From positions 280,635 through 344,634 of IMG/VR virus record IMGVR_UViG_3300022868_000009: a stretch of DNA of 64,000 bases, one strand, 5' to 3'. Numbering within the stretch: the first letter of the stretch is position 1; the number at the start of each line of letters is the position of its first letter. Shown in pieces: positions 19,984-61,753 of the stretch. The notes beneath the pieces were generated by a model. It did no database searches. It was given only the letters and a program-made list of their open reading frames with translations, and was not told the origin of the DNA. Made by a program: the position numbers and the translations under genes.

Positions 19984-20307
19984 ATGAAACATATTTCAAC
20001 ATATAACGAATACTTACAAACACCCTTAAATTTATCAATACCAATATAGAAGATAATGATAAATTTACAAATTACCTAGAACAATCAAACCTAATATCAA
20101 AAAATTCTTTATTTAGAACATATCATAAAGGATGTATATATCATACATTTTTAATATCAATTATAGATAATCATTCTTAAAAATTAGTTGTTCAAACCCA
20201 GATAATGTATCTGGGTTTGAACAAAAAGGAGTAAATGAAATATTATTTGATCCAGATATAATTATATAATTATAAGATTAGAAGCAAATAAAATGGGATT
20301 ATTATGA
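19984..20307 (+). pseudogene. Disrupted N-tag/C-tag gene
   Basis: Begins MKHISTYNE at 19984, ends EANKMGLL-TGA overlapping ATG 20304; internal stop/frameshift. Confidence 0.65.
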
Positions 20308-20585
20308 AATATTTAAAGACATACAACGAATCAAAATATAAACCATCATATACTGCACGCCCAATGCCAGATAAATATCGGCTTAGATGTGAATATTTAA
20401 TAGATAAATACGGTAAACTAAATACAAATAATAAAATTACACATTTATCAGAAGAATCAGAAATTTTACAAATAGATATAAATGATGATTATAGATTAGA
20501 TATTTTTAAAACTACTGATAAATCGTTACTTAATATGAGAGAATTAGAAATGAAATTACAAGCAAAAGAATTAGGATTGTTATAG
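20304..20585 (+). CDS. Hypothetical, N-tag (MKYLKTYNE) + C-tag (AKELGLL); paralog of 21030 and 58927 ORFs
   Basis: Shared RC.YL.DKYG motif. Confidence 0.8.
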   Translation: MKYLKTYNESKYKPSYTARPMPDKYRLRCEYLIDKYGKLNTNNKITHLSEESEILQIDINDDYRLDIFKTTDKSLLNMRELEMKLQAKELGLL

Positions 20586-20647
20586 ATTTAATGAAAAGGG
20601 GAATTTATATTATAATATATTTAATGTATCATAATTTAGCACCTTTT

Positions 20648-21029
20648 TTATAATAATCCCATTTGATTTGCCTGTTTAACATTATCGAGTGATATACCAA
20701 CATTTTTTTCTAACCAATTTTCAATTGTAATATAATTGTATTTTTTATAATCAGGATCTTGTAAATTATTTTGTAAATATACCATACTACCCCCAATTAA
20801 AATCATAATCTTTAACATTAAATATTTCATAATTTTCTTGAGAAATAGATATCAGAAAATAACTAGGTCTACCACCAGAATAACGAAAAATATAATCATA
20901 ATCTATATCAATATTATAAAAATCATCATATAATGAAAATAATACAAAATTAATACATAATATATGTATACATAATATTAAAACAGATGATATAAAATTA
21001 TTAGAAAAAATATGTTGTTTTAAGGTATT
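20648..21029 (-). pseudogene. Fragmented C-tag gene (ends ANQMGLL)
   Basis: Only the last 60 codons are open; KYLKT-like start remnant near 21015-21029. Confidence 0.5.
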
Positions 21030-21416
21030 TTATAACAATCCCATTTTTTTCGCAGTTAATATTTTTTCTATTTCAGAACCTAATAAAAATGCATTTAATT
21101 TTATGAGTATAGAATTATCTAAATCATCATATTGTACATTTCTTTCATATTCACTATCTGATAAATTATAATAATAAATAATACCGGTTGTATTAATATT
21201 ACTTTGATAAATGTCAAATTTTAAATCATCTAATTTTATTTTTATTAAATTAGTAGATGTAGATCTACCATAAAGATCAGATATTCTATTATTACCATCA
21301 TTATTTTTTTCACCGTATTTATCTAGTAAATATAAACACCTATTAAATACTTTATCAGGCATTAAATAACAATGATTTCTATTAATTTTTTCTAAATATG
21401 ATTTCAAATATCTCAT
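21030..21416 (-). CDS. Hypothetical, N-tag (MRYLKSYLE) + C-tag (AKKMGLL)
   Basis: Both terminal motifs. Confidence 0.8.
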   Translation of the reverse strand: MRYLKSYLEKINRNHCYLMPDKVFNRCLYLLDKYGEKNNDGNNRISDLYGRSTSTNLIKIKLDDLKFDIYQSNINTTGIIYYYNLSDSEYERNVQYDDLDNSILIKLNAFLLGSEIEKILTAKKMGLL

Positions 21417-21457
21417 TAATCTTATATATTAAATTTAAATAAGAATATATAAATAAT

Positions 21458-21760
21458 ATGAAATACCTTAAAACATATAATGAAAATAAATCATTTAATG
21501 ATAAAGTTAATATGATTAAAAAAATAGTAGACACCGTTGGTAAAACTGATGATAGAGGTAAAATTTTAAATTTAAACTATAAATCAAAAGGTTCTAAAAC
21601 CTATCTTTTAAAAATTCAAGATACATGCTGGATAAGTATTGAGATGATAGGTACAAGATTTTTAAGAAATTTAGATTCTAGAGTAATTGAATCTATATAT
21701 AAAGAATTAAAAGAAAAATACCCAGAGTTTTTTATGGGAGATAAATTAGGTATTTTATAA
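21458..21760 (+). CDS. Hypothetical, N-tag (MKYLKTYNE) + C-tag (GDKLGIL)
   Basis: Both terminal motifs. Confidence 0.8.
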   Translation: MKYLKTYNENKSFNDKVNMIKKIVDTVGKTDDRGKILNLNYKSKGSKTYLLKIQDTCWISIEMIGTRFLRNLDSRVIESIYKELKEKYPEFFMGDKLGIL

Positions 21761-22260
21761 AATAAAAGTCTTAAAAAATTTTCCAAAAAAATTTTCCAAA
21801 AAAATTTTAGAAACAAAATCCCAGTTTCTAAGTTATACTTTGTAACGGATACCCAAACGTAATTATATTATATATTATATTATATACACTTTTTAAATTT
21901 ACACTTTCTGACAAATACTTAATATCTACTACAAAACAGTTACTAATTTAAATGAACACTACTTACTCTATAAAAACAAACTTACTATTCTGTGATATAA
22001 AAAGTACTCTATTTACTATAAAATAGTTAATACCTTATATAGATAATACTTTATTTTAAAATAAACTTCTTTATATTATTTAAAATAAACTTCTTCATGA
22101 CCTCATATATTCACTATATCTATATATGTAGATAGGTGGCCCGTGAGCTATTTTTACTTATTATTATTAATCTTAAATTAGGAGGATTTTTATAATCCTT
22201 ATCTATTATTATTTTTTTGTCATGGATCATTGTGACATCTTTTTTTATTTTTATATTAAG
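21761..22260. other. Non-coding AT-rich region with short direct repeats; candidate replication origin
   Basis: aaaaaattttcc x3 (21773-21808), tttaaaataaacttct x2 (about 22054-22094); + strand switches from C-rich to G-rich across it. Confidence 0.4.
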
Positions 22261-22302
22261 GTTGCTTTCCTTATCTTTGTAATGAATAAAAATTATAATG
22301 AG

Positions 22303-22854
22303 ATGGAAAATTATTTTAAAATTGAACATGGAAGAAAGGTTGAGACATACACACCTAAAGATACATATGTATTAACATGGAATGAAAGACATGGTGATGC
22401 TGATCAAAGTATGCCTACATCTATGACTATACACAGTATGGATGAGTTATGGTTCATGTTATGGTTTAGTAAGTGGTTAGATAGATACAGACAGTATAGT
22501 GACTTAGATGAGTATAGTAAGGTACTTAATAAGTATAGTAAGGAGTTATTGGGTAGTAGTTGGTATATAACTGATTGGTGTAGTGATGTGTATGATCATG
22601 ATTGTATATATTCTAGTTGTTATTGTGGTGTGGATGCCATGAAGTTATATTATTATGATGAGCATGGTGTTAAGTATGAAGAGGAGATTGATGGTAGTAC
22701 ATATATATCTTTAGTGAAGATGGGATATAAGTTAGATTGTTGGTTCATTGATAAGTATCCACATATAGCTAATGAGTTACAGGGTATGATATGTGATGCT
22801 GCATTGGAAGATAAGAAGGATGTTATTGAGGCTAATAAAATGGGGTTGATATGA
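22303..22854 (+). CDS. Hypothetical, GDAD...YYYDEHGV family with C-tag (EANKMGLI)
   Basis: Start moved downstream of promoter at ~22270; paralog of 26950 and 43171. Confidence 0.75.
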   Translation: MENYFKIEHGRKVETYTPKDTYVLTWNERHGDADQSMPTSMTIHSMDELWFMLWFSKWLDRYRQYSDLDEYSKVLNKYSKELLGSSWYITDWCSDVYDHDCIYSSCYCGVDAMKLYYYDEHGVKYEEEIDGSTYISLVKMGYKLDCWFIDKYPHIANELQGMICDAALEDKKDVIEANKMGLI

Positions 22855-23183
22855 TAGATAAGAATATAGTTATAGTATCGTATAGTAAAGAGGAGTTTAA
22901 TTATGTATTGAATCTATTTAAATCTAGGGAGTTCAGTAGGTCTACGATTGATTCGTATCTACGTTACGTTAATGATGATGGTCATTATAATGATTATGTA
23001 TATCCTATTGCATTAATTGTGAGGTTTAAATTAATGTCAGCAACGTGGCAGTATAAAGATATGTGGGATCATATTAATGATTTATTAGATAGGGGTGAGG
23101 TTGATAGTGTTATTGATTGTAAAGATTTCAAAGAGATGGGTGGTGATAATTATATTGAAGGTATTAAATTAGGTTTACTTTAA
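22851..23183 (+). CDS. Hypothetical, C-tag (EGIKLGLL)
   Basis: ATGA overlap with previous tag. Confidence 0.8.
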   Translation: MIDKNIVIVSYSKEEFNYVLNLFKSREFSRSTIDSYLRYVNDDGHYNDYVYPIALIVRFKLMSATWQYKDMWDHINDLLDRGEVDSVIDCKDFKEMGGDNYIEGIKLGLL

Positions 23184-23213
23184 AGTTTAGAAGGTATTCC
23201 TTATCTTTGTATT
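23182..23213 (+). promoter_or_regulatory. Early promoter repeat aaagtttagaaggtattcc(g/t)tatctttgta containing Bacteroidota -7 element TAnnTTTG
   Basis: Near-identical copies at 23182, 25415, 26165, 30653; looser copies (GAA-N5-TCCGTAT[AC]TTTGTA) about 35 times between 22 and 61 kb. Confidence 0.85.
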
Positions 23214-23255
23214 GAATATAATTTAAAGAATAGAAAATGATAAAAGGAATAAGTA

Positions 23256-23573
23256 ATGACATATAAGGTATTGATTAAGGTTCGTAATGAATCTGAATGG
23301 ATATCATGTTGTGATATGTTGTATAGTCATGGTTATCGATGGCAAGACAATTGTATGGACTCAAAGAAGATACATGGATATAAGTTGATAAGTGAAGGTG
23401 ATATATATTTAGTTATATATAATCATACTGACCCTCATCATCATGATGATCGTTTATTTTATAATACTAATGTTAATGTTGATATTTATGGGCCGGATGT
23501 TATTATAATTAATTATGTTGAAGGTATGGATTTACATGAGATAATAGAAGTTAATAAATTGGGATTAATATGA
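23256..23573 (+). CDS. Hypothetical, C-tag (EVNKLGLI)
   Basis: Paralog of 23570 (KVRNESEW..CC.MLYSHGY.W). Confidence 0.8.
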   Translation: MTYKVLIKVRNESEWISCCDMLYSHGYRWQDNCMDSKKIHGYKLISEGDIYLVIYNHTDPHHHDDRLFYNTNVNVDIYGPDVIIINYVEGMDLHEIIEVNKLGLI

Positions 23574-23905
23574 TAGTATTTAGTAAAGATATAAAGAAAA
23601 TAAATATTAAGGTTCGTAATGAATCTGAATGGGTATCATGTTGCAATATGTTGTATAGTCATGGTTATCATTGGAATGTTGAGTCTGATTTTATGGAGAT
23701 ATATTCTGAATGTTTAGAAACTGCTAAGGAATATATTAAGACTTATGCAATAAATGATGGTATATATTTAGTTGTTTATAATGATAATAGTGGACGGTTA
23801 TATTATAATTATAAATATAAGACTGATGGTATAATAAATCTTGATTGGTATGATGGTATGGATTTACATGAGATAAATGAAGCTAATAAATTGGGGTTAA
23901 TATGA
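23570..23905 (+). CDS. Hypothetical, C-tag (EANKLGLI)
   Basis: Tandem paralog. Confidence 0.8.
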   Translation: MIVFSKDIKKINIKVRNESEWVSCCNMLYSHGYHWNVESDFMEIYSECLETAKEYIKTYAINDGIYLVVYNDNSGRLYYNYKYKTDGIINLDWYDGMDLHEINEANKLGLI

Positions 23906-24207
23906 AAGAGAAGATATACATAATATTAAATAATATAGATGATTGGATTAATTGTTGTAATCAATTAGACAATGAGGGATATTTTTGGGCAAGAAGTAGT
24001 GACTCATATAAAGATAAATATCATAAATGTAAAACTTTCGGTAATCCTGAAAATTATATAGTAATAGGTCATAATGAGTATGATGATAATCGTTTATATT
24101 ATGGTAATATATATAATGATAAGAAGTTTGATGGTATTATTTTATATTGGGATGCTGATGTAGATTTAGAAAGTTATTTTGCAGGTTTAAAAATGGGATT
24201 ATTATAA
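23902..24207 (+). CDS. Hypothetical, C-tag (AGLKMGLL)
   Basis: Tandem paralog (W..CC..L...GY.W). Confidence 0.8.
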   Translation: MKEKIYIILNNIDDWINCCNQLDNEGYFWARSSDSYKDKYHKCKTFGNPENYIVIGHNEYDDNRLYYGNIYNDKKFDGIILYWDADVDLESYFAGLKMGLL

Positions 24208-24317
24208 TAATATTTTCATGTTTGACCAGGGAGAATTTAGGTTGGAGGAAAGGGGATATTTTTATTTGGTGAAGGTTTGTTGTGTATTTGTGTATAAATT
24301 AAAATGTAAAAAAGATT

Positions 24318-24698
24318 ATGATAAAATGGATTAATATAAGGCTGGAAGGTTATGGTAAAGGTAAAGGTAAAGGTAAAGGTAAGAAGAAACTGAATAAGAT
24401 GGTTATGCGTAAATTGTTACATCAAATTGATTGTAAGGTTGGTTTTCGTATTAAGGATGGTGGATGGAAACCAGTTTTAAATAGTTTAAAAGAATATAAG
24501 CATTATAAATATATATGGATTGCTATATGTCCTTTTGGTAAAGATATGGCTGCGGATTATCATGAAAATAAAGAAGAATGGGAGAGTTATAAAGACGGTA
24601 TTGAGGCGGATGAAGCTGAGGTATGGTTGAGTTGGGAAGAGTTTATGGATTTAGATATTCAGATGATTGTTAATGGTTCTAAAATGAATTTATTATGA
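24318..24698 (+). CDS. Hypothetical, C-tag variant (GSKMNLL), GK repeat
   Basis: ORF track. Confidence 0.75.
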   Translation: MIKWINIRLEGYGKGKGKGKGKKKLNKMVMRKLLHQIDCKVGFRIKDGGWKPVLNSLKEYKHYKYIWIAICPFGKDMAADYHENKEEWESYKDGIEADEAEVWLSWEEFMDLDIQMIVNGSKMNLL

Positions 24699-25087
24699 AA
24701 GATATAAAGTGGATAAATATAATGTTAGACTGGGATAAGTTTAAGTGGGAACAATTCCATGATGTTGTTGATTATTATAAAGAGTTATTTCCTAAATTAG
24801 ATTGGACAACTGTTCAAACTGAGATACAGATACATGATAAAATTCGAAATGAATCTGTTTTTGATATTTTAGGTTTATCTATATGTTTGGAACATGATAG
24901 TAATGATTTTAATATTAATAATTGTGAAAATACTATAAATAATTGGCATCCTGTTATATTTAAGTATGGTATTGGTGATGATTTATATGACAAGCAAACT
25001 GGTATTGAAATAATTGTTAAATATAGTAAAGATTTCCGTGAAGAGATTGAGTTTTATTTAGAGGGTTCTAAAATGGGTTTATTATGA
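24695..25087 (+). CDS. Hypothetical, C-tag (EGSKMGLL)
   Basis: ATGA overlaps both sides; related to 51002. Confidence 0.8.
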   Translation: MKDIKWINIMLDWDKFKWEQFHDVVDYYKELFPKLDWTTVQTEIQIHDKIRNESVFDILGLSICLEHDSNDFNINNCENTINNWHPVIFKYGIGDDLYDKQTGIEIIVKYSKDFREEIEFYLEGSKMGLL

Positions 25088-25416
25088 AAAAAACAATAAT
25101 ATTTTTACATAACAATAAGGATTTGGGCAACTTGTTCATGTATTTACATGTTATTGGATGCAAATGGTCTAGTGGTAGACCTATTATAATAGATAGTGAA
25201 ATACAAAGATTTAATTTATCTTGTTCTAGATCTAAATCTGTTGCAATTATCGTTGATGATGGTAGTCTTACTTATGTATCAAATAAGAAAGATATTGTTT
25301 ATAGTTATATATCTGGTGATAAATTTAAATATTATGATCATTATGAGTATGTAGATTTTGATAAGGAGTTTGATATTGATGTAACTATTAATGGTAATAA
25401 GATGGGATTACTTTAA
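25084..25416 (+). CDS. Hypothetical, C-tag (NGNKMGLL)
   Basis: Paralog of 25469/25801 (YLH.IG.KW, YDHYEY). Confidence 0.8.
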   Translation: MKKTIIFLHNNKDLGNLFMYLHVIGCKWSSGRPIIIDSEIQRFNLSCSRSKSVAIIVDDGSLTYVSNKKDIVYSYISGDKFKYYDHYEYVDFDKEFDIDVTINGNKMGLL

Positions 25417-25468
25417 AGTTTAGAAGGTATTCCGTGTCTTTGTATTATAATTAAAGGAGGAAACAAAA

Positions 25469-25804
25469 ATGAAAATGATAATATATGCACATAATGACGA
25501 AGATATTTATAAGTTATCAACTTATTTACATTATATTGGAATTAAATGGCAAACTGAAATTTTTATTATGAATGATGGTGAAATGACAATAGATTGTAAT
25601 AGAGCTGAATCTAAATCTATTGCATTTTGTGTTAAAAATAATCGTGTGTCATATATGAATGATGGTGGTTCTTTTGGTGGTGATGTTTATAATTTTTTCA
25701 AAAGGCAACCATATGAATGTTATGACCATTATGAGTATATTGAATTTGATAAGGAGTTTGGTGTTGATATGGTTTTAGAATCAATAAAGATGGGTTTATT
25801 ATGA
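25469..25804 (+). CDS. Hypothetical, C-tag (ESIKMGLL)
   Basis: Promoter and AGGAGG upstream. Confidence 0.8.
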   Translation: MKMIIYAHNDEDIYKLSTYLHYIGIKWQTEIFIMNDGEMTIDCNRAESKSIAFCVKNNRVSYMNDGGSFGGDVYNFFKRQPYECYDHYEYIEFDKEFGVDMVLESIKMGLL

Positions 25805-26166
25805 AAAAAACAATAATATATGTACATAGTGATGAGGATATGATTAATTTATTAAGTTATTTACATTTTGTTGGAGTTACATGGCATGGCTCTGCTATTA
25901 TAAAAGATGATGATAGTTCCGATAATTTTTTTAATGCCGATGCCAGATATATAGATATTAGTTGTAAAAAAACGGGAACTGTTGGATTTTGTATTGATCA
26001 AGATGATTATATTACATATATGGATGATGGTACTTTTAAAGGCGAGAATGTTTATGAATATTTCGGTAGAGATTTTATGGAGTATGATCATTATGAGTAT
26101 GATGAATATGTTGAAAAGTTTGATATTGAACCACTCATAAATGGAATAAAGATGGGTTTACTTTAA
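25801..26166 (+). CDS. Hypothetical, C-tag (NGIKMGLL)
   Basis: Tandem paralog. Confidence 0.8.
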   Translation: MKKTIIYVHSDEDMINLLSYLHFVGVTWHGSAIIKDDDSSDNFFNADARYIDISCKKTGTVGFCIDQDDYITYMDDGTFKGENVYEYFGRDFMEYDHYEYDEYVEKFDIEPLINGIKMGLL

Positions 26167-26218
26167 AGTTTAGAAGGTATTCCGTATCTTTGTATTATAA
26201 TTAAAAAGGAGAAGAAAA

Positions 26219-26473
26219 ATGAAAAAGAAACAAAATAAAAAAGAAGAGAGTAAATATCAATACAGAAGTGATACTGCTGTTAGGGTTGAAGAAACTGAAT
26301 ATAGTGTAAATGAGTATGACGAATGGGATCGCATAGTATTTTATTTATGGAAGAAGAGTGGTTATTGGTCTGTGAATGTTTTTGCTCCTGTAACTGATGG
26401 TAAAAGGGTTTCATTAGAACCTTTACAAGTAATTCATAAGTATTGGACATCTTATAATAAATTATCAATATGA
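26219..26473 (+). CDS. Hypothetical protein
   Basis: Promoter and SD upstream. Confidence 0.7.
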   Translation: MKKKQNKKEESKYQYRSDTAVRVEETEYSVNEYDEWDRIVFYLWKKSGYWSVNVFAPVTDGKRVSLEPLQVIHKYWTSYNKLSI

Positions 26474-26736
26474 AAAGATTAAATATATTTGTAAGAAGTG
26501 GATTACAGCAAACGTTGTTTCTACATTATTTATATACTAATGGTTATAGTTATAAAGATAGAAAGGATCTTTATTGGAAATTTACTAATGGTTCAGGTGC
26601 TATTGTGGTTAATGTAATTGATAAAATAATATTAGGTGGTAACACAGGTTGGTTTGCAACACAATCACATATGAATGTAAAAGAATTTGTTGATAAGGCG
26701 TGGGAATTTGAAAGTATGAGGATTGGTGTATTATGA
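26470..26736 (+). CDS. Hypothetical, degenerate C-tag (ESMRIGVL)
   Basis: ORF track. Confidence 0.7.
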   Translation: MKRLNIFVRSGLQQTLFLHYLYTNGYSYKDRKDLYWKFTNGSGAIVVNVIDKIILGGNTGWFATQSHMNVKEFVDKAWEFESMRIGVL

Positions 26737-26949
26737 TTAAGGAATATCATATATGTATTATAAATAAAAAGGAGAAAAAAATGCTAACAATATTAACAAT
26801 ATTATTAATATGGAATCAATTTAGTGGTTGGTTTAGAAAGATGTTTTGTAAAATTGGTTTACACACATGGATTAAAGTCTATTCACATAATGAAAAAGGT
26901 TGGCATATAAAGGAAAAGAAATGTAGAATATGTAATAAGGAGGTAAAAA

Positions 26950-27459
26950 ATGATAAAAATAATAGAAAATAAAACACAAACTAAAAGAATTGAACCTTAT
27001 TATAGGTTAAAATTTAGTTACATGATTGGTGATGCTGATGGTGACACTACAGAGAAGATTGATATTCCTCTTAACAATCCATATGTCGAAAGAGTTGTTG
27101 ATGTTTTAAATAATTGTGATACACCTAAAGGTCATTGGGGTATGATATTAGACTCTGAACATTTCACTAAGTTATTGAATCAGGGTAAAATGACACAGAG
27201 TGATTATAATTTTTGTAAAGTGGTTGTATTTGGTGATGACATTGATGAACACATGGAAGAGTTTTTCAGCAAGGAAAGAATTGAGGCTGACAAATTAAAA
27301 TTATTGGAGATAACTGGCGATGAAAAATCATACGCTTATGAATTTGAAGAGGCTTGTATTACTTCGATTGGACATAGTTTCGCAGTTTTTGAAGGTATTG
27401 ATTTATATTATATTGATGAATATGGAGTAAAACATGAGACCAAAATAGTTGATGATTAA
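26950..27459 (+). CDS. Hypothetical, GDAD...YYIDEYGV family lacking the C-tag extension
   Basis: Shared motifs with 22303 and 43171. Confidence 0.75.
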   Translation: MIKIIENKTQTKRIEPYYRLKFSYMIGDADGDTTEKIDIPLNNPYVERVVDVLNNCDTPKGHWGMILDSEHFTKLLNQGKMTQSDYNFCKVVVFGDDIDEHMEEFFSKERIEADKLKLLEITGDEKSYAYEFEEACITSIGHSFAVFEGIDLYYIDEYGVKHETKIVDD

Positions 27460-27533
27460 AACATTAAAATGGTAAGGAATTTCAGAAGGAGTTCCTTATC
27501 TTTGTATTAATATTAATTTAAAGAAGAAATAAA

Positions 27534-54176: not shown

Positions 54177-54178
54177 TT

Positions 54179-54590: not shown

Positions 54591-54620
54591 ATTAAAGACT
54601 ATGTTTTAAATTAAATAACA

Positions 54621-54923
54621 ATGAATGATATAGATATAAATGTAAATGAAGATAATTATATAGAATTTGTCAATTATTTATATAGTATTAATTATATAAC
54701 TAAGAATGATAATGAAAGGTTAGTTAATTGGTATACTGATGTGAATGATTATTTTCAAAAAGAATATAACTCATATGAATATAGATTATTTTTTGATCGT
54801 AAAGAATGGGATATAATAGCTTGTTGTTGTGGCGGTTCTGAATTTTTTAAAAAAGTAACTTTTATTAATAATTTAAAGGAATTAGAGGTTTATATGAATT
54901 GTTTAAAAATGGGGCTATTATGA
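54621..54923 (+). CDS. Hypothetical, C-tag (NCLKMGLL)
   Basis: ORF track. Confidence 0.8.
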   Translation: MNDIDINVNEDNYIEFVNYLYSINYITKNDNERLVNWYTDVNDYFQKEYNSYEYRLFFDRKEWDIIACCCGGSEFFKKVTFINNLKELEVYMNCLKMGLL

Positions 54924-55240
54924 AAAGAATTGCAATAGAGATATATTCCATAGAGAAATTATTTGAAATATGGGAAGAAATGGTTGATTTAGGTTACACT
55001 TTAAGTTCTTGGACTAATATATTTAAGAGAACAGAAATTGATTGGCTTGGTTTTTTAAGTATTGAAAGAGGTGGTATTTATCTTTGTTTTGATTTAGATA
55101 AGTGTATAATGATTGGTTGGGGAAGTCTATATTATGATTCTGGAAAAAAGTTTATTATTAAAGATTTTGAATTAATTATAGATAGTAGTAAAGATGATAT
55201 TAGATTTCATCTAAATTCAATTAAGATGGGGTTATTATAA
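54920..55240 (+). CDS. Hypothetical, C-tag (NSIKMGLL)
   Basis: ATGA overlap at 5' end, TTATAA overlap at 3' end. Confidence 0.8.
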   Translation: MKRIAIEIYSIEKLFEIWEEMVDLGYTLSSWTNIFKRTEIDWLGFLSIERGGIYLCFDLDKCIMIGWGSLYYDSGKKFIIKDFELIIDSSKDDIRFHLNSIKMGLL

Positions 55241-55603
55241 TAGTCCGAGTTTATTTCCTTGTATCAATATATCAAGATCCATTCCATATTCTTTTTTTAA
55301 CCAATCATCACAACTTATAAAAGAATCTTTATAAAATGACACATATTCTAATAGAAACTTCATTGAGCTCCAACACTTATCAAAGCGTTGACCATCATCT
55401 AATGTAAAAAATGTTTTATCTTTTGAAAAAGCAACCCAAAAATTTTCTTTAAAATTTACTCTAGAATATTCTATATCATATTTTTCCTCAATTAATTTTA
55501 TTATAAATTTTGTTTCTTTATGAGGTATATCAGTTATTACAACAATATTATCCTCTTTATTTTCATTGTATGTATTAAGATATTTCATTTTCAAATGTTT
55601 CAA
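55235..55603 (-). CDS. Hypothetical, doubled N-tag (KHLK-MKYLNTYNE) + C-tag (QGNKLGLL)
   Basis: Both motifs; core related to 61463/61750 (ITDIP). Confidence 0.8.
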   Translation of the reverse strand: MKHLKMKYLNTYNENKEDNIVVITDIPHKETKFIIKLIEEKYDIEYSRVNFKENFWVAFSKDKTFFTLDDGQRFDKCWSSMKFLLEYVSFYKDSFISCDDWLKKEYGMDLDILIQGNKLGLL

Positions 55604-55611
55604 ATCTTATT

Positions 55612-56163
55612 TTGTTTTATATATTAATTTGTTTTTTTAGAATATTTTTTTTATCTTTCAATATGAAAATAAATATAATGTATGCGGGGATGGCGGATGA
55701 TATTATGCTTCCAATGTTACAAGTTCCAACTTTCATAATAATCCAAGTTTATTTGCTTCTATTTTTATTTGATGGAGCCTTTGCTAGAAATGGTTGGGAA
55801 AGTCAAAAAGAAGATATAAGACAAACGTTATTGTCTGGTAATAATGAGAATTCATGGCACAGGGAGGTATATTTAAAATATGAATCAGACACTCCAACTT
55901 TTTCATTAGAAGAAAAATGTGTTATATTATCTGATATAGATAAAGATGAATGTTGGAAATTGACATTTGATTATAATGGAAAGCGCAGAGAACTAATTTA
56001 TTATCATCATCAAAACTTTTATGATGTGTGGCCTGATAATATAAAGGATATTAATCATTTATTTAGTATTGGTGCTACTTTTGAATATTTAACAGAACCT
56101 AAATTAAAAGAAATGTTGAAGACAAGATGTACTGGTTATTTATATGATCAAGTGACACCATAA
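55612..56163 (+). CDS. Hypothetical protein, start uncertain
   Basis: ORF track. Confidence 0.5.
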   Translation: MFYILICFFRIFFLSFNMKINIMYAGMADDIMLPMLQVPTFIIIQVYLLLFLFDGAFARNGWESQKEDIRQTLLSGNNENSWHREVYLKYESDTPTFSLEEKCVILSDIDKDECWKLTFDYNGKRRELIYYHHQNFYDVWPDNIKDINHLFSIGATFEYLTEPKLKEMLKTRCTGYLYDQVTP

Positions 56164-56217
56164 GAAACAGAAATAATTCAAATGAATAGAAGGATTTATA
56201 TTAATAAAATAGATATA

Positions 56218-56697
56218 TTAATATAATCCCATTTTATTTGCATTATAAAGGTCTGGATTTTCTTTCCAAAACCATTCCCAATATTCTTCTAAATTATTAT
56301 AAGGTAATTGGTTATTATAACAATTTAAATATTCTAATCTTTTAGATAATTCAGGTAATTCAGTTAATTGGTTACCATCACAATCTAAATATTTTAACTC
56401 TTTTGGTAATTCAGGCAATTTAGTTAATTTATTATTATAACAATATAATATTTCTAACCCTTTTGGTAGTTCAGGTAATTCAATTAATTTGTTGTTGTCA
56501 CAATATAACATTTCTAATCCTTTTGGTAATTCAGGTAATTCAGTTAATTGATTATTATAACACATTAATTTTTCTAACCCTTTAGGTAATTCAGGTAATT
56601 CAGTTAAATTTAAATTAACTAAATTTAATATTTTACCATCATCACTTAGATGATCTTTTATTAATTGGTTTTCTGAATATGTTTTTAAATATTTCAT
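56218..56697 (-). CDS. Leucine-rich-repeat protein (20-aa LPELPKGLE.L.C.NN.L repeats) with N-tag and C-tag
   Basis: About 5 LPX-type repeats; MKYLKTYSE...ANKMGLY. Confidence 0.9.
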   Translation of the reverse strand: MKYLKTYSENQLIKDHLSDDGKILNLVNLNLTELPELPKGLEKLMCYNNQLTELPELPKGLEMLYCDNNKLIELPELPKGLEILYCYNNKLTKLPELPKELKYLDCDGNQLTELPELSKRLEYLNCYNNQLPYNNLEEYWEWFWKENPDLYNANKMGLY

Positions 56698-56718
56698 CTA
56701 TTTTATAATTTTATTGAC

Positions 56719-57102
56719 TTACATAAGTCCTAATTTACCTGATTCAAATACATATGGGTTATTATGAAAGAATATTTTCATAATAAATAATATTAGTTCA
56801 TAATCTTTTATTATTTGGTGTCCATCATTTTTATTTGAAGATTCTTTTATCCAATTTGGATCTGATACAACTGCAACTTGCTGTTCAACTTTTTGTAATA
56901 TTATTTGAAATAGATTTCCTTCTCGTTTTAACACAATAGTTGTGTATACTCCGTTATAATCTATTTCAAGGAATCCATTTCTAATATAAATTTTAAATTT
57001 GGTATCTTTAAACATATCTTTTATTGTATCAACAAAGAAATCTTGATTGTTATCATTAACTGAAATCTCATTTATCATTTGATATGTCTTTAAATGTTTC
57101 AT
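56719..57102 (-). CDS. Hypothetical, N-tag (MKHLKTYQMINE) + C-tag (ESGKLGLM)
   Basis: Both motifs. Confidence 0.8.
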   Translation of the reverse strand: MKHLKTYQMINEISVNDNNQDFFVDTIKDMFKDTKFKIYIRNGFLEIDYNGVYTTIVLKREGNLFQIILQKVEQQVAVVSDPNWIKESSNKNDGHQIIKDYELILFIMKIFFHNNPYVFESGKLGLM

Positions 57103-57123
57103 CTATTTTATAATTTTATTGAC

Positions 57124-57492
57124 TTACAAGACACCAAGATTTTTTGTCCCATTATACATATTTATCATATTTTGTAATTCATTCATAAATTCATCTTTAG
57201 TTATTAATATATCTGAGTGTTTATAATAACCGCAAGGACCATAAATACGATTTAATTTATAATGAATTGTTCTACTTTCATGTTGTACACAGCAACTATA
57301 CACCATTTTTCTTTTATCTTCCTCTTTTTCAAGTATATCACAACATAATTCTATTTTTGTTCTATGTACATCAAATTTAAAATCATTTATAAGTTTATCA
57401 TATATTTCAATTGCTTCTTTTGCGTTATTAAATTCAACTGATATAAACTTATCTTCATCTATATTTTCATTATATGTTTTAAGGTATTTCAT
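57124..57492 (-). CDS. Hypothetical, N-tag (MKYLKTYNE) + C-tag (TKNLGVL)
   Basis: Both motifs. Confidence 0.8.
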   Translation of the reverse strand: MKYLKTYNENIDEDKFISVEFNNAKEAIEIYDKLINDFKFDVHRTKIELCCDILEKEEDKRKMVYSCCVQHESRTIHYKLNRIYGPCGYYKHSDILITKDEFMNELQNMINMYNGTKNLGVL

Positions 57493-57962
57493 TATAATAA
57501 TCCTAGTTTATTTGCTTCTAAATCTGCTTTAAGGTCTTCACTTTTAAGGTATTCTAATATTTGTGAAAGTTTTTTATAATTTTTTAAATTTTTACTAACC
57601 CTTGTTAAAAGACTAAATTTATCTCTATTATTATCTTCAATAAGATAAGCAATAACATCAACAATTTTACTAGTATTAATATCAACTGAATCTAATACTT
57701 CTAGATGTGTATAATTACCTAATTTAATATTTTCTGGTATTTTTATAAATACTTGTTCATATTTATCACCATGTAAAATATATTGATATTTATTATATAT
57801 TTTAGCACATTCCTTTTTAATATCTGATATTAGTTTATTAAAATTATCAAAAATTGTTTTATCATTTATTTGTTTATAAAGCAATTCTTTTTGTTTATAA
57901 AATGATTCTTGTTGTTTATAGTTTTCTTCTATGTTTTCGTTATATGTTTCACTTATGATCAT
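57492..57962 (-). CDS. Hypothetical, degenerate N-tag (ETYNE) + C-tag (EANKLGLL)
   Basis: ORF track. Confidence 0.75.
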   Translation of the reverse strand: MIISETYNENIEENYKQQESFYKQKELLYKQINDKTIFDNFNKLISDIKKECAKIYNKYQYILHGDKYEQVFIKIPENIKLGNYTHLEVLDSVDINTSKIVDVIAYLIEDNNRDKFSLLTRVSKNLKNYKKLSQILEYLKSEDLKADLEANKLGLL

Positions 57963-58082
57963 ATTGTTTTGTTTGTTTTATATATTAATTTGTTTTTTTA
58001 GAATTTTTTTCTTATATTACAATAATTATTAAAAATTATGAAAGAATTAATTTGGTTAAATATATGTTATAAAGGTCTTATG

Positions 58083-58325
58083 TCAAAAGAAATGTATTTC
58101 TACATATTCATCTATGATGATTGGATGATATCTTTTAATATCTCTCACTATATCATCTACAATTTCTTTTAGTTTTATTATATCTGTATTTGGTGGAACA
58201 AATAAGTAAATTTCTGAATCATCTTTACACAAACCCTTTTTATTCAAATAATATGGTGTATTTTTAAATATATCATCAATAATATATTTAAATTTAAATG
58301 ATTCATACTTTTTTATATATTTCAT
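58083..58325 (-). CDS. Hypothetical, N-tag only (MKYIKKYES)
   Basis: ORF track. Confidence 0.7.
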   Translation of the reverse strand: MKYIKKYESFKFKYIIDDIFKNTPYYLNKKGLCKDDSEIYLFVPPNTDIIKLKEIVDDIVRDIKRYHPIIIDEYVEIHFF

Positions 58326-58335
58326 AATTATTAGA

Positions 58336-58746
58336 TTATAAAAGACCCATTTGACCTGTTATTAATAATCTTTTTACTTTTTTTAATGGTACTAAATAAT
58401 TTTCCCAGTTTTCTGGACTATCATCTATACCATCTGTTATATCTTTATCTTCCCAAACAGATATTGGTATTTTATTATCCTTTGTAAAGATAGTGTTTGC
58501 ACCATTTTGATCAAATCGTATAATCTCTTCATCAAATAAATTAAAAATTGTTCGACTTGTTTTTATATTATCATCAATATATGAATTATAGTCAGTAATT
58601 AAATGTTTTGCATATTGATTAAACCATTTACAACCATTCTTTATAGCTAAATTAGTATAAGTAAAATATTCATCAATATTACTTACTTCAAACACAAATA
58701 ATACATTTGGTATTGTACTTTCATTATATGTTTTTAAATATTTCAT
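58336..58746 (-). CDS. Hypothetical, N-tag + C-tag (TGQMGLL)
   Basis: Both motifs. Confidence 0.8.
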   Translation of the reverse strand: MKYLKTYNESTIPNVLFVFEVSNIDEYFTYTNLAIKNGCKWFNQYAKHLITDYNSYIDDNIKTSRTIFNLFDEEIIRFDQNGANTIFTKDNKIPISVWEDKDITDGIDDSPENWENYLVPLKKVKRLLITGQMGLL

Positions 58747-58926
58747 TATAGTTTATATATTTATTTTTTTATTTAAGAAAATTTTAACTATTTTTTTAAT
58801 ACCTTTAGTTTTAACTATTGGTATATTTTTAAAATAATTATTTAATTCATCAACCATTTTAATTCTTAACTTAGATGTAATGGTCATAGACTTAGCAAAT
58901 TGATTATATGTGTCTAATTTATTCAT

Positions 58927-59352
58927 TTATAATAGTCCTAATTTAGTAGATTCAAATTTTGATTCTATATTTTCACTATGAATATATTCTATTATTTTTT
59001 CTTCAAATTCCGTAGAGCAACTCTCAATATAATAATTAGTGTCATTCACAGATTGAAGAAATATTCTATAAGAAGTCGAAATTTCTTCATCATACTTTAT
59101 GATATATAATGATAAATCATCATCTGGATCTACAATTGTTCTTCTATCTATATTAGTAGGTTTATCTATAAAATCTGAACCAGATACATTTACTTTAACA
59201 TCTGTTCTACTATTCAAATATTCATTAGGTTTACCATATTTATTTATTAAATACTCACATCTATATAATAATTCTTCATCATCTTTATAAATATGATGAA
59301 CAGTACCATTATCATATATTAATGATTCATTATAAGTTTTTAAATATTTCAC
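58927..59352 (-). CDS. Hypothetical, N-tag + C-tag (ESTKLGLL)
   Basis: Both motifs; RCEYLI.KYG family. Confidence 0.8.
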   Translation of the reverse strand: MKYLKTYNESLIYDNGTVHHIYKDDEELLYRCEYLINKYGKPNEYLNSRTDVKVNVSGSDFIDKPTNIDRRTIVDPDDDLSLYIIKYDEEISTSYRIFLQSVNDTNYYIESCSTEFEEKIIEYIHSENIESKFESTKLGLL

Positions 59353-59471
59353 AAGACTATATATTAATTTTTTATTTTAAGATAAATTTTCTATATTAAA
59401 ATTATGGATATTAAAGAAAACCTTAAAAATTATTATGAAATTAGATAAATATTTCTTAATTAAAGATAAAT

Positions 59472-59795
59472 ATGATTAAAATTAATATTACGGGAATTAA
59501 TTGTAATGAATTTGAAAAGTTACAAAAAATATTCTTTGATCAAAATATACCTTGGTATTATAGTGGTTATAAATTACAATCATCCGATGATTGTAATTAT
59601 TATCATAACATTTATATTGTTTCAAAAATCGTTGTCATGAGAAATGATAACCATGAAAAAGAAGAATATTATATGACCTTTAAAAAAGATAATATAATCT
59701 CAAAAGACCAAGATTTAATTGAATATAAATATGATGAAATGGATGAGAATACATTAAAAAGTTATTTTAACGGTTTACAACTAGGATTATTATGA
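59472..59795 (+). CDS. Hypothetical, C-tag (NGLQLGLL)
   Basis: ORF track. Confidence 0.8.
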   Translation: MIKINITGINCNEFEKLQKIFFDQNIPWYYSGYKLQSSDDCNYYHNIYIVSKIVVMRNDNHEKEEYYMTFKKDNIISKDQDLIEYKYDEMDENTLKSYFNGLQLGLL

Positions 59796-60110
59796 TATCA
59801 ATAAATATAGAAAATATAAGTCTAAATGACTTCAAGAAATTGCAAATACATATGATTGATCAAAATATTCCTTGGATTGATGGTGATTGGGAAGTTTGGG
59901 TAGATGGATATTGGTCATTTATAATTAATCATAAAAAAAAATATCTTACTAATTGATCAATATACATCAACTGGTAAACCAGTTGATGGTTACCTTAGAT
60001 ATAATATGCAATTGTGTAATGTTTCATCTCCAATCGTTTTAAGTGTTGAAGAAATGCTTGATTTAAATATATACGAATATTTGGAGGCGAAAAAGTTTAA
60101 TTTATTATAA
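59792..60110 (+). pseudogene. Frameshifted paralog of 59472 (ends EAKKFNLL)
   Basis: DQNIPW motif; frame breaks near A-run at 59933-59941. Confidence 0.65.
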
Positions 60111-60355
60111 TAGATCCATCTTATTCGATGCAATATACTCTTGTAAATTAAAATCTTTAGTTATATCAGAACCATTTAACTTACCTAACAAAATACCAAT
60201 TTCAGTATATTTTTCAATAATTTGATTATAAAACCAAGTAGTCCAATGATTTCCAATATAAGTTTTATCATCTATATTAATTAGTAAATTAATTTCTTTC
60301 CAAAACCATTCCTTATATCACTAATACTTTCATCATATGTCTTTAAGTATTTCAT
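60105..60355 (-). pseudogene. Disrupted N-tag/C-tag gene (MKYLKTYDE ... ASNKMDLL)
   Basis: Both termini readable, frame broken. Confidence 0.65.
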
Positions 60356-60572
60356 GAATAATTTAAAAACTTTTGTTTTATATATTAAAATTTAGATTTG
60401 AATATCAATACCCAGAATTTATATTCCAACCTCTACAATATCATAAAATTAATTTTTATACCAAGAAATATTCCTTATATTTAAGTATTGGAATTTCGAA
60501 AAAATTGAAGAATTTTTATTTTTTGAACAAATTCCGTATATTATAAATGATGAAATACATAAACTACTAAAT

Positions 60573-61463
60573 ATGGAAGAAAAAACAAAAATATTATTAA
60601 ACGGCAAAGAAAATAAGAGCGAACTTATTAACTTACTTACAAAAGTTGATGTTTCTTGCTCTACTCGTGAACTAAATTCTGAGTTGATAGTTAAAATCAA
60701 ACATTTTAACAAATGTATCGAAGAAAATATCGAATTCAGAAATAAATTCAATGTTAATGAAAGATTTGAGTTCTTAGAAGATCTTACCAACATGATTATT
60801 GATGGTAAAGGTAACTCATTGATAGTTATAGGTGAAGGTGGACTTGGTAAAACATTTACTGTATTAAGCACTTTATCAAAAAGAACAAAAACTGGATTTC
60901 TAAACCTTTTCAAGAAAAAAGAAGATGTTCACATAGTTAAAGGTTTCTCAACAGCTAGAGGTCTATATGATACATTATATGATAATAGAGATAAATTAAT
61001 TTTATTTGACGACTGTGATTCAATCTTAGAAGATAAAACAGCTATTAATATTTTAAAATCAGCTTTAGATTCTTATGATACTAGAATCGTTACATGGTCT
61101 AAATTTTTGAAAAATAAAAACAATTATCCACAATCATTCGAATTTACAGGTAGAATAATCTTTATCTCAAATAAAAAGAAAACTCAAATACCACAACCAA
61201 TCTTAACAAGAGGTTATGTAGTTGATTTAGAAATGAGCAATGGTGAGAAAATCGACAGAATGGCTCACATCATGCCAACACTTATCGAAGATAAAGGTAA
61301 AGGTAGATGGAGTTTAAATGATGGTTTTACGGCTTTAGAATTCATTAGAATAAATATAGATGATGTTAAAGAACTAAGTATTAGAACATTAGTAGATGTT
61401 TTAAGAATAATGAAATCAAGAAAAAATTGGGAAAAATTAGCTTTATATACAATAACAGAATAA
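60573..61463 (+). CDS. AAA+/P-loop ATPase
   Basis: Walker A GEGGLGKT, Walker B ILFDDCD, IIFISN, ILTR. Confidence 0.85.
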   Translation: MEEKTKILLNGKENKSELINLLTKVDVSCSTRELNSELIVKIKHFNKCIEENIEFRNKFNVNERFEFLEDLTNMIIDGKGNSLIVIGEGGLGKTFTVLSTLSKRTKTGFLNLFKKKEDVHIVKGFSTARGLYDTLYDNRDKLILFDDCDSILEDKTAINILKSALDSYDTRIVTWSKFLKNKNNYPQSFEFTGRIIFISNKKKTQIPQPILTRGYVVDLEMSNGEKIDRMAHIMPTLIEDKGKGRWSLNDGFTALEFIRINIDDVKELSIRTLVDVLRIMKSRKNWEKLALYTITE

Positions 61464-61753
61464 TGACAACATATATAACAGATATACCATCAGAATATAT
61501 ATTATATCTTGATAAAATAATCAGTGAATATTATAATATGAAATCTATAATTAGACCTAATAAAAGAATCATAAAATATGATTATTATTTTATAAGTATC
61601 AATAAATATAATGATAATTGTCTGTGTTATTCAGGTATGTGTTATTTACATGAACTCATAGGACCAACCAGTGAAACTATTAATTATGTTGATTGGTTAG
61701 AAAAACATAATTTAACATACAAATTAGAATCAACCAAATTAGGATTATTATGA
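61463..61753 (+). CDS. Hypothetical, C-tag (ESTKLGLL)
   Basis: Tandem paralog of 61750. Confidence 0.8.
   Translation: MTTYITDIPSEYILYLDKIISEYYNMKSIIRPNKRIIKYDYYFISINKYNDNCLCYSGMCYLHELIGPTSETINYVDWLEKHNLTYKLESTKLGLL

What the first reader, a model, noticed from the sequence alone, without database searches (positions are those of the whole stretch)
20285..61753. Tag-coding DNA doubles as the head-to-tail junction and survives as orphan scars
Seen: in at least 13 cases the tag's TGA stop overlaps the next ATG, usually as TTATGA or ATATGA (20304, 22851, 23570, 23902, 24695, 25084, 25801, 49021, 49238, 49534, 54920, 59792, 61750). Tags without an intact ORF remain at about 20290, 40650, 48335, 49225, 52065, 53860 and 60095/60115, mostly just before the next start. 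Inference: arrays expand and contract by recombination through this ~20-bp homology, and the tag DNA may also supply translational coupling, which would explain why it outlasts its gene.
Basis: partly seen in the sequence, partly recalled or inferred. Interest (0 to 1): 0.68.

Follow-up and report, generated by a model that had tools for sequence, protein, structure and literature searches.

The report
Dead gene copies in phage arrays
A very large phage carries over fifty small, fast-changing genes in this window that all end in the same short peptide; the "orphan" tag pieces are wrecks of dead copies left by ordinary deletions and frameshifts, and the overlap with the next gene's start is normal tight operon packing, not a special recombination or coupling device.

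Summary
51 intact genes in the window end in h-h-E-[AGS]-x-K-[ML]-G-L-L. This is 53 of 489 genes genome-wide against 0.03 expected. All 13 listed TGA/ATG overlaps exist, plus four more. All seven listed orphan sites exist, and three further ones were found.

- **Orphans are decaying paralogues.** They carry frameshifts or internal deletions, and their 5' ends are often retained too. A second assembly is 100% identical, so they are not assembly errors.
- **Sister strains show how they form.** One strain still has the intact gene whose last 9 codons are the orphan at 53842-53877. Another strain makes a new orphan by a 628-bp deletion. Both events have breakpoints outside the tags, at short microhomologies.
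- **Tags are poor recombination substrates.** Their DNA is no more alike than codon usage predicts (69% against 68%; median exact run 6 nt).
- **Coupling is not special to the tag.** Overlap frequency is not higher than for untagged small genes, and orphans abut a start no more often than intact genes.
- **Arrays do vary.** A relative has 7 tagged genes where the window has 4.

The tag is conserved as a peptide. Its reader is unknown.

The parts
19245..32530 (+). Array 1: 23 intact tagged genes (3 on the minus strand at 20648-21416), arranged as short operons behind repeated promoter-like spacers. Interrupted by HU (28696-29010), SprT-like (30705-31166) and a 275-aa gene.
48208..62046 (.). Array 2: 25 intact tagged genes on both strands plus most of the orphans.
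22851..22854 (+). Example ATGA stop/start overlap. The same form occurs at 20304, 23570, 23902, 24695, 25084, 25801, 26733, 49021, 49238, 49534, 54920, 59792 and 61750.
19984..20307 (+). Orphan o1: frameshifted paralogue. An N-terminal piece, a middle piece and the tag lie in different frames, and the tag's TGA overlaps the ATG at 20304.
40486..40668 (+). Orphan o2: 60-codon frame (33 aa from the first Met) ending in QKLGLL. Only the last 34 codons or so resemble paralogues.
48208..48352 (+). Orphan o3: 19 N-terminal codons (another frame) plus 23 C-terminal codons of a paralogue, with the interior deleted. The same state is seen in a third sample (L075).
49021..49241 (+). Orphan o4: third tandem copy of the 49238/49534 genes with a 91-nt internal deletion, so it is out of frame. 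Its last 53 nt are 100% identical to the end of the 49534 gene.
51756..52081 (+). Orphan o5: copy of the 51002 gene with a 61-nt deletion and a frame change. The 5' block is 94% and the 3' block 98.7% identical to that gene, and the 3' block ends where the tag begins.
52196..52422 (+). Orphan o6: weakly recognisable decayed copy ending in EKMNLL.
53838..53877 (+). Orphan o7: start codon plus 3 codons of one gene joined to the last 9 codons (STKMGLM) of another. Strain L076 has 555 bp more here, including the intact 104-aa gene.
55733..55783 (-). Orphan o8: 16-codon remnant ending in KIEANKLGLL. It lies antisense to a probably spurious plus-strand frame at 55612-56163.
59792..60108 (+). Orphan o10+: paralogue of the 59472 gene, broken by a frameshift at an A9 run near 59935. 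It ends in a degenerate tag, KKFNLL.
60105..60355 (-). Orphan o10-: frameshifted gene with the MKYLKTY N-terminus and a degenerate tag, NKMDLL. It converges on o10+.
58927..59352 (-). Not an orphan: an intact 141-aa tagged gene with a GTG start.
25417..25468 (+). 52-nt promoter-like spacer containing TAnnTTTG. Near-identical copies are at 23184-23255, 26167-26218 and 30652-30704. These are the longest high-identity repeats in array 1.
29894..30521 (+). Segment absent from strain L078. The 628-bp deletion runs from the start codon of the 29884 gene into the 30331 gene, at a 9-10 nt imperfect microhomology. In that strain it leaves a new orphan tag (RSLGVL).
25790..25804 (+). Tag of the 25469 gene. 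Strain L034 has a 2-nt insertion here that destroys the tag but keeps the downstream ATG. Strain L033 has a 2-nt deletion earlier in the same gene.

Best explanation
The window is part of a tailed phage genome of at least 434 kb with 25% G+C. From its promoter type, the host is probably in Bacteroidota.

The window holds two hyperplastic arrays of small early-type genes. These belong to a very divergent, fast-turning-over multigene family, with more than 100 members in the phage. What they share is a C-terminal peptide of about 14 residues ending in K-[ML]-G-L-L. The tag is conserved at the protein level, most likely as a docking peptide read through its free C-terminus. Its reader is unknown.

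Genes are packed into short operons, so the last codon (TTA or ATA) plus a TGA stop automatically spells ATGA with the next start. This is the ordinary phage stop/start overlap and involves only 4 shared bases.

Copies are born by tandem duplication. They die by frameshifts and by microhomology-mediated deletions whose ends fall anywhere inside gene bodies. Deletions that ran past the stop would remove the next gene's start or promoter and are purged. So 3' stubs of variable length remain, often with 5' stubs. The tag is simply the only part the eye can recognise in them.

Shown: the homology of the orphans, the strain polymorphisms, the statistics and the identity of the two assemblies. Inferred: the polarity argument, the early timing and the docking role.
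For: **Tag statistics**
- 53 of 489 genes carry the motif against 0.03 expected.
- 50 motif-plus-stop hits in the window against 0.74 in shuffles.

**Orphans are broken paralogues**
- The flanks of o1, o3, o4, o5 and o10 (both strands) match intact family members in other frames.
- A body-only HMM hits 25 tagged genes. Two of its three untagged hits are such fragments.

**Strain evidence**
- L076 holds an intact 104-aa gene where the window has only its last 9 codons. The breakpoints are at codon 4 of one gene and 9 codons before the stop of the next.
- L078 lacks 29894-30521, which creates a fresh orphan at a short microhomology.
- L033 and L034 carry different 2-nt indels in the same gene.

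**Not assembly error**
- The second contig G004 is 100% identical over window 18562-64000.
- L075, from a third sample, shares o3.

**Peptide-level conservation**
- Tag DNA identity is 68.8% against 68.0% expected from codon resampling. The median exact run is 6 nt in both.
- M and L alternate at position -4.
- Lys and Leu codons follow genome usage.

**Junctions are ordinary**
- Any overlap: 21 of 52 tagged against 45 of 133 untagged small genes, p = 0.49.
- Shine-Dalgarno-like motifs precede 7.6% of genes.

**Turnover**
- Between HU (88% identical) and SprT (76% identical), relative L070 has 7 tagged genes and the window has 4. Cross-genome identity of these genes is 25-51%, and each genome's duplicates resemble each other more than those of the other genome.
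- dN/dS against strain L033 is about 1.
Against: - ATGA overlaps specifically are commoner after tagged genes: 15 of 52 against 33 of 328, p = 6e-4. Tandem copies are not independent, and the tag's last codon forces this form of overlap.
- Two mosaics touch the tag. The last 53 nt of o4 are 100% identical to those of a neighbour that is otherwise 70-79% identical. In o5, a 98.7% identity block stops exactly at the tag. So recombination tracts near tags do occur.
- The tag's Gly codon is GGA or GGG in 68% of tags against 33-40% elsewhere. This is unexplained and could be an RNA-level signal.
- Only two strain-level indels could be mapped.
Confidence: 0.75

Rival explanations
1. The tag DNA is a portable homology of about 20 bp through which arrays expand and contract by unequal recombination. 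It persists after gene death because it provides translational coupling or an initiation region for the next gene.
For: - Copy number differs between relatives.
- ATGA overlaps are enriched after tagged genes.
- High-identity blocks often begin within the last 9-18 nt of a tag and run downstream.
- The o5 identity block ends at the tag, and the o4 tail is identical to a neighbour's.
- The tag's Gly codon is biased.
Against: - Tag pairs share a median exact run of 6 nt. Only 1.7% share 15 nt or more, and there is no excess over codon-usage expectation.
- Neither of the 2 mapped indels has a boundary in a tag.
- Orphan stubs vary from 9 codons to full length, keep their 5' ends too, and their tags decay.
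- Orphans abut a start in 4-5 of 10 cases, against 21 of 52 for live genes.
- The genome hardly uses Shine-Dalgarno motifs.
- The Gly codon bias is the same with or without a nearby start (read from the rows).
Confidence: 0.12
2. Array change is driven by recombination between the repeated promoter spacers (about 52 nt, 95-98% identical), as with PeSL cassettes of T4-type phages. The tags merely lie next to them.
For: - The spacers are the longest near-identical repeats in array 1 (57 nt at 96.5%, 42 nt at 97.6%).
- They carry a TAnnTTTG box that occurs 28 times on the plus strand of window 22-45 kb.
- There is precedent for such shuffling in PMC2839356.
Against: - The spacers have no significant stem-loop (z from -2.0 to +0.5).
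- Array 2 lacks the motif.
- The two mapped indels do not end in spacers.
- Mini-circles could not be sought.
Confidence: 0.2
3. The orphans are sequencing or assembly errors, and the genes are intact in the real phage.
For: One break, o10+, lies in an A9 homopolymer.
Against: - Two contigs from different samples are 100% identical over 45 kb, including every orphan.
- A third sample shares o3.
- Several orphans involve deletions of 61-555 bp, not single-base slips.
- Long core genes, up to 1,825 aa, are unbroken.
Confidence: 0.03
4. Some orphans are functional short frames, such as leader peptides or mini-ORFs like MGLL or the 7-codon frame at 53838, which tune expression of the next gene.
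For: - Several sit directly before a start.
- The tag's own Met codon gives a 4-codon frame that overlaps the next ATG at 20293-20307.
Against: - Nothing beyond the tag peptide pattern is conserved.
- The remnants are strain-specific.
- Their lengths and frames are heterogeneous.
Confidence: 0.05

Closest known systems
Hyperplastic regions and PeSL cassette shuffling in T4-type phages (Arbiol et al. 2010, PMC2839356; PMC4122927)
   Same: - T4-type head and packaging genes: gp23-like capsid protein and T4-type TerL.
- Blocks of small non-essential ORFan genes behind repeated strong promoter motifs.
- Indels between close strains are concentrated there.
   Different: - The repeats here are Bacteroidota-type promoter spacers without the stem-loop.
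- The mapped indels do not end in them.
- The genes are one huge family marked by a shared terminal peptide, not unrelated ORFans.
T-even internal proteins with a conserved capsid-targeting sequence (PMC3012670)
   Same: Highly diverse small proteins that share only a short terminal address peptide. The locus is polymorphic between relatives.
   Different: - The T4 address is N-terminal and is cleaved by the prohead protease; this tag is at the extreme C-terminus.
- The proteins here are acidic (median pI 5.1), more than 100 in number, and sit behind early-type promoters.
- A separate N-terminal motif, MKYLKTY[EN]E, is the better look-alike of the T4 sequence (recalled from memory).
Poxvirus gene accordions and ANK/PRANC multigene families (from established knowledge)
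   Same: - Tandem arrays in a large DNA virus that gain and lose copies quickly and leave fragments.
- A variable body joined to a conserved C-terminal motif that (in poxviruses) docks to a host degradation hub.
   Different: - The host is bacterial.
- The motif is about 14 residues, not an F-box-like domain.
- No hub has been identified and no adaptive amplification has been shown.
Translational coupling through ATGA stop/start overlaps in operons (established knowledge)
   Same: Four-base overlap on the same strand at 13 or more junctions with real downstream genes.
   Different: Nothing tag-specific. The overlap follows from a last codon ending in A plus a TGA stop. Coupling itself was not tested.
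C-terminal docking peptides: beta-clamp motif QL[SD]LF, the [LIV]-G-[FL] ClpP-docking tripeptide, the SspB tail, encapsulin cargo peptides (from memory; leads only)
   Same: A short hydrophobic motif containing Gly at or near the free C-terminus, shared by unrelated bodies.
   Different: - The first position is K in about 70% of tags and Q in about 10%.
- No phage clamp, ClpP, PDZ or S41 protein was found.
- No binding was tested.

Membership tests
Decaying paralogues (pseudogenes) of the tagged family | Sequence flanking the orphan tag matches intact family members, but in another frame or with internal loss | tested here: met
   o1, o3, o4, o5 and o10 (both strands), by tblastn and alignments. 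o2, o6 and o8 are only weakly recognisable.
Decaying paralogues (pseudogenes) of the tagged family | An intact counterpart exists at the same place in a sister strain, or the reverse | tested here: met
   o7 against the 104-aa gene in L076. L078 makes a new orphan by a 628-bp deletion.
Decaying paralogues (pseudogenes) of the tagged family | Breaks are reproducible and not assembly artefacts | tested here: met
   G004 is 100% identical over window 18562-64000.
   Median exact run 6 nt. Pairs sharing 15 nt or more: 1.7% against 2.1% expected. Identity 68.8% against 68.0%.
   Neither of the 2 mapped indels does. The sample is small.
Translationally coupled overlapping genes | Same-strand stop/start overlap into a real downstream gene | tested here: met
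   15 of 52 tagged junctions are ATGA and 6 of 52 are TAATG. Total overlap does not exceed that of untagged small genes.
Translationally coupled overlapping genes | Downstream translation depends on upstream translation | not testable with these tools
   Needs a reporter or ribosome profiling.
PeSL-type regulatory cassettes (PMC2839356) | Repeated intergenic promoter element | tested here: met
   52-nt spacers, 95-98% identical, with TAnnTTTG. 28 motif hits on the plus strand of window 22-45 kb. Promoter activity is inferred.
PeSL-type regulatory cassettes (PMC2839356) | Stem-loop terminator within the cassette | tested here: not met
   The four array spacers fold no better than shuffles. Terminator-plus-promoter composites exist only after the HU genes.
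PeSL-type regulatory cassettes (PMC2839356) | Mini-circles or indels bounded by cassettes | tested here: inconclusive
   The two mapped indels are not bounded by spacers. Mini-circles are not testable without reads.
T4 capsid-targeted internal proteins | N-terminal targeting peptide removed by the prohead protease | tested here: not met
   The tag is C-terminal. Glu at position -8 occurs in only about 60% of tags. The S77 protease match is below cut-off, 21.9 against 27 bits.
Beta-clamp-binding motif | Consensus QL[SD]LF with Gln first | tested here: not met
   Position 1 is K in 43 and Q in 4 of 53 tags. No clamp gene was found in the phage. Binding was not tested.

The most novel reading that the evidence does not exclude
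The K-[ML]-G-L-L tail is an address peptide read through its free carboxyl end. It would tie more than 100 hypervariable, mostly acidic early proteins of one giant Bacteroidota-type phage to a single hub. That hub could be a host unfoldase or protease, a clamp, or the prohead. This would be a bacterial-virus counterpart of poxvirus ANK/PRANC families or T4 internal proteins, with arrays evolving as an arms-race accordion.
Probability: 0.3. Interest if true: 0.8.

Novelty: new member of a known kind. Interest (0 to 1): 0.42.

Why it matters
The junction-and-scar idea reduces to known processes: operon packing, tandem duplication, and microhomology deletion with purging of deletions that hit the next gene.

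What remains notable is the substrate.
- The gene family is undescribed. It has no Pfam or PHROG match and only 34 hits among 1.8 billion representative proteins.
- It makes up roughly an eighth of the genes on this contig.
- It is marked by a strictly terminal peptide.
- It turns over fast enough that about one locus in six in this window is a wreck, and that sister strains differ.

That is an unusually clear natural record of gene birth and death in a phage. It also gives a tractable handle, a single 5-residue C-terminus, for finding what these proteins dock to.

Tried and rejected
- **Read evidence.** Nothing else was tried in its place. A second assembly served as the check instead.
- **Alternative genetic code.** Rejected. 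TAA is 76% of stops, and reading any one stop codon as sense adds only 8-21% to long-frame length, with no sign of reassignment.
- **Family and fold searches of tagged proteins.**
  - No Pfam hit at E 0.001 or better, and only weak unnamed PHROG hits, best E 8e-5.
  - The AlphaFold model (pLDDT 83) has no PDB or BFVD match. The best VIA Z-score is 3.3. ESM Atlas gave only shape look-alikes among phage DUFs.
- **Long multi-repeat hits** P0009, P0024, P0028, P0030 and P0033 gave no useful domains.
- **IMG/VR scan for the exact 18-nt tag DNA** found only this phage plus chance hits.
- **The relative G001** (508 kb, TerL 47% identical) has no tag enrichment.
- **Shine-Dalgarno role of the tag's GGA.** Rejected. 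Shine-Dalgarno-like motifs are rare, and the codon bias does not depend on a nearby start.
- **Sigma-70 consensus scan.** Not enriched: 104 against 95.
- **Phage-encoded readers of the tag.** PDZ, S41, ClpP, DnaN and gp45 clamp were not found.
- **Complex prediction was not run.** No partner had enough prior support to justify a claim of binding.
- **58927-59376 (minus strand) as an orphan.** Rejected. It is an intact gene with a GTG start.

Full report
**What the window is.** The window is the last 64 kb of a 344,634-bp virus contig with 25% G+C.
- The contig encodes a T4-type large terminase, a fused topoisomerase II, ribonucleotide reductase and a weak S77 prohead-protease match.
- It also encodes a gp23-like capsid protein and thymidylate synthase, and the window holds nine tRNA genes.
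- It is therefore a tailed jumbo phage.
- The standard code fits. TAA is 76% of stops, and reading any one stop codon as sense adds only 8-21% to long-frame length, with no sign of reassignment. No other code was used.
- A second contig from another sample (G004, 348,222 bp) is the same phage shifted by 85,475 bp. It runs 89 kb past the window's end, so the genome is at least 433.7 kb.
- Intergenic spacers carry CCGTAT[AC]TTTGT, which contains the TAnnTTTG -7 box. From established knowledge, that box is typical of Bacteroidota promoters. There are 40 hits in the contig against about 8 in shuffles, and 28 of them lie on the plus strand of window 22-45 kb.
- Shine-Dalgarno-like motifs precede only 7.6% of genes.
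- The host is therefore probably a member of Bacteroidota. This is an inference.

**Checking the observation.** The tag is real and far beyond chance.
- [KRQN][LM]G[LIV][LIFM] followed by a stop occurs 50 times in the window. Dinucleotide shuffles gave 0.74.
- Genome-wide it ends 53 of 489 genes, against 0.03 expected from its internal frequency. The seven internal matches are chance hits in large proteins.
- The full module is about 14 residues: acidic-h-x-x-h-h-[E/N]-[G/S/A]-x-K-[M/L]-G-L-L.
- The window has 51 intact tagged genes. The 89 kb beyond it in G004 has about 42 more.
- All 13 listed TGA/ATG overlaps exist, and four more were found. All listed orphans exist, and three further ones were found.

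**What the tagged genes are.**
- They have no Pfam match at E 0.001 or better and only weak unnamed PHROG hits.
- A profile of 35 members found only 34 proteins among 1.8 billion representatives. About half are the phage's own. Most of the rest carry the same tail, and five are long untagged proteins.
- With the termini removed, 60 tagged proteins fall into 47 clusters by phmmer. A body-only profile still unites 25 of them. Two of its three untagged hits in the genome are fragments of broken copies.
- An AlphaFold model (pLDDT 83) is a small alpha/beta domain ending in a helix and then MGLL. It has no significant structural match.
- The proteins are mostly acidic, with a median pI of 5.1.
- A relative whose terminase is 47% identical (G001, 508 kb) has no such tail enrichment. 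The family is therefore confined to a narrow clade.

**Junctions.** Genes lie in short operons behind promoter spacers. A last codon of TTA or ATA followed by TGA necessarily spells ATGA.

| Junction type | Tagged | Untagged (all) | Untagged (small genes) |
|---|---|---|---|
| ATGA overlap | 15/52 | 33/328 (p = 6e-4) | 17/133 (p = 0.016) |
| Any overlap | 21/52 | 99/328 (p = 0.15) | 45/133 (p = 0.49) |

- The dual coding is limited to four bases, or one base in the TAATG form. It is the usual packing of small phage genes.
- Orphans abut the next start in 4-5 of 10 cases, the same proportion as live genes.

**The orphans are dead paralogues.**
- tblastn and alignments show N-terminal, middle and C-terminal pieces of family members in different frames at o1 (19984-20307), o3 (48208-48352), o4 (49021-49241, 91-nt internal deletion) and o5 (51756-52081, 61-nt deletion).
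- The same holds for the two convergent genes at 59792-60108 and 60355-60105, whose tags have themselves decayed to KFNLL and KMDLL.
- Stubs range from 9 codons to full length, and the 5' end is often retained as well.
- The frame at 58927-59352 is an intact gene with a GTG start, not an orphan.
- Every orphan is reproduced without a single difference in G004. L075, from a third sample, shares o3. Assembly error is therefore very unlikely.

**Strain comparisons show how orphans form.**
- *L076* (96-99% identical) has 555 bp more at window 53849. The extra segment is a truncated copy of the 93-aa gene and an intact 104-aa gene ending in TKMGLM. The window keeps only ATG plus 3 codons of the first gene and the last 9 codons of the second.
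- *L078* (99.5% identical) lacks window 29894-30521. That deletion runs from the start codon of one tagged gene into the middle of the next, at a 9-10 nt imperfect microhomology. It leaves a new out-of-frame stub with its tag in front of the promoter of the SprT-like gene.
- In neither case is a breakpoint in a tag.
- *L034* has a 2-nt insertion inside a tag that destroys it but spares the next ATG. *L033* has a 2-nt deletion earlier in the same gene.
- At greater distance, *L070* keeps HU (88% identical) and SprT (76% identical) but has 7 tagged genes between them where the window has 4. Their cross-genome identity is only 25-51%, and each genome's duplicates resemble each other more than those of the other genome.
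- dN/dS against L033 for nine array genes is about 1.

**Is the tag a recombination substrate?**
- Mean identity of the last 21 nt among 53 tags is 68.8%. The median in-register exact run is 6 nt, and only 1.7% of pairs share 15 nt or more.
- Resampling codons from genome usage for the same peptides gives 68.0%, 6 nt and 2.1%.
- So there is no DNA-level homogenisation, and the supposed 20-bp homology is rare.
- M and L alternate at position -4, and the Lys and Leu codons follow genome usage. This points to selection on the peptide.

Against this stand three observations:
- The tag's Gly codon prefers GGA or GGG, 68% against 33-40% elsewhere. This is unexplained.
- The last 53 nt of o4 are identical to those of a neighbour that is otherwise 70-79% identical.
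- The 98.7% identity block of o5 ends exactly at the tag.

Recombination or conversion tracts among neighbours therefore occur and can include or border the tag, but they are longer than it. The longest near-identical repeats in array 1 are the 52-nt promoter spacers. These could act like PeSL cassettes of T4-type phages (PMC2839356). However, they lack a stem-loop, and the mapped indels do not end in them.

**Most likely mechanism.**
- Tandem duplication makes copies.
- Frameshifts and microhomology deletions kill them.
- Deletions that cross the stop would remove the next gene's start or promoter and are lost.
- So 3' stubs, and 5' stubs, persist for a while. The tag is the part that remains recognisable.
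- The tag itself is maintained in live genes as a peptide. Because it is always exactly terminal, it is probably read through its free carboxyl end by a common partner.
- No phage PDZ, S41, ClpP, DnaN or gp45-type clamp was found. The partner is unknown.
- The closest functional analogies are T-even internal proteins, which are diverse bodies with one short address (PMC3012670), and poxvirus ANK/PRANC families.

**Notes required by the operators.**
- No reads were laid.

Noticed in passing
window 18135-19208(-), 19638, 20304, 21030(-), 21458, 52802(-), 55235(-), 56218-58746(-); G000 989-1761, 21254-22795 and others: A second shared terminus. 22 genes of the contig start with MK[YH]LKTY[EN]E. 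13 of them also carry the C-terminal tag and 9 do not, including proteins of 513 and 357 aa. The motif resembles the T4 capsid-targeting sequence (recalled from memory).
   Followed up: partly
window 22269-44715, plus strand: The motif CCGTAT[AC]TTTGT, which contains TAnnTTTG, occurs 28 times in intergenic spacers here, out of 40 in the contig (about 8 expected). Together with the rare Shine-Dalgarno-like motifs (7.6% of genes), it points to a Bacteroidota host and marks this block as promoter-dense, probably early.
   Followed up: partly
G004:C1:259160-348222 (L086-L090), beyond the window's end: A second contig of the same phage continues 89 kb past the window and holds about 42 more intact tagged genes and several more orphans. 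The genome is at least 433.7 kb. The 48% completeness estimate for the record fits a larger genome.
   Followed up: partly
window 56218-56697(-); G000 20757-21254 and 97217-97822; L086-L089: A repeat family of about 500 bp with 10 or more copies at 82-89% DNA identity and an internal 60-nt periodicity. It lies inside genes that start with MKYLKTYSE and end in NANKMGL[YM].
   Followed up: no
window 29033-29090; also after 35368 and 37000: Terminator stem-loop immediately followed by the promoter box (z = -2.9 for the HU-downstream one). This is a composite terminator-promoter element reminiscent of PeSLs, but it lies outside the tagged operons.
   Followed up: partly
window 28696-29010, 36566-37000, about 42643-42951: Three HU-like (Bac_DNA_binding type) genes with similar N-termini (MANKKDL / MANRKDL) within 14 kb. 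The relative L071 also has two.
   Followed up: no
window 33089 (L078 4167-4310) and 29442 (L078 1084-1118): Strain L078 has a 144-bp insertion with a 46-aa frame directly upstream of tRNA-Lys. It also has a 35-nt insertion just after the ATG of the 29439 gene, which lengthens its N-terminus.
   Followed up: no
G000 1788-3440, 8010-9752, 93117-94694, 95580-97226, 100168-101979, 130817-132418: Six paralogous proteins of about 550 aa share a C-terminus of the form Y[DN][SA]G..[KR][FWY]. They may be fibre or structural paralogues. Several other large proteins end in acidic-aromatic tails (DDFWDF, DDFWN, DDWGF).
   Followed up: no
tag Gly codon, all tagged genes: The tag's Gly is GGA or GGG in 36 of 53 tags. 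The genome-wide figure is 33%, and it is 40% in the same [ML]G[LIV] context elsewhere. The other tag codons follow genome usage. No explanation was found.
   Followed up: partly
window 55612-56163(+): A 183-codon plus-strand frame lies antisense to orphan o8 and to weak remnants of a minus-strand family member. It is probably spurious, but this was not examined.
   Followed up: no
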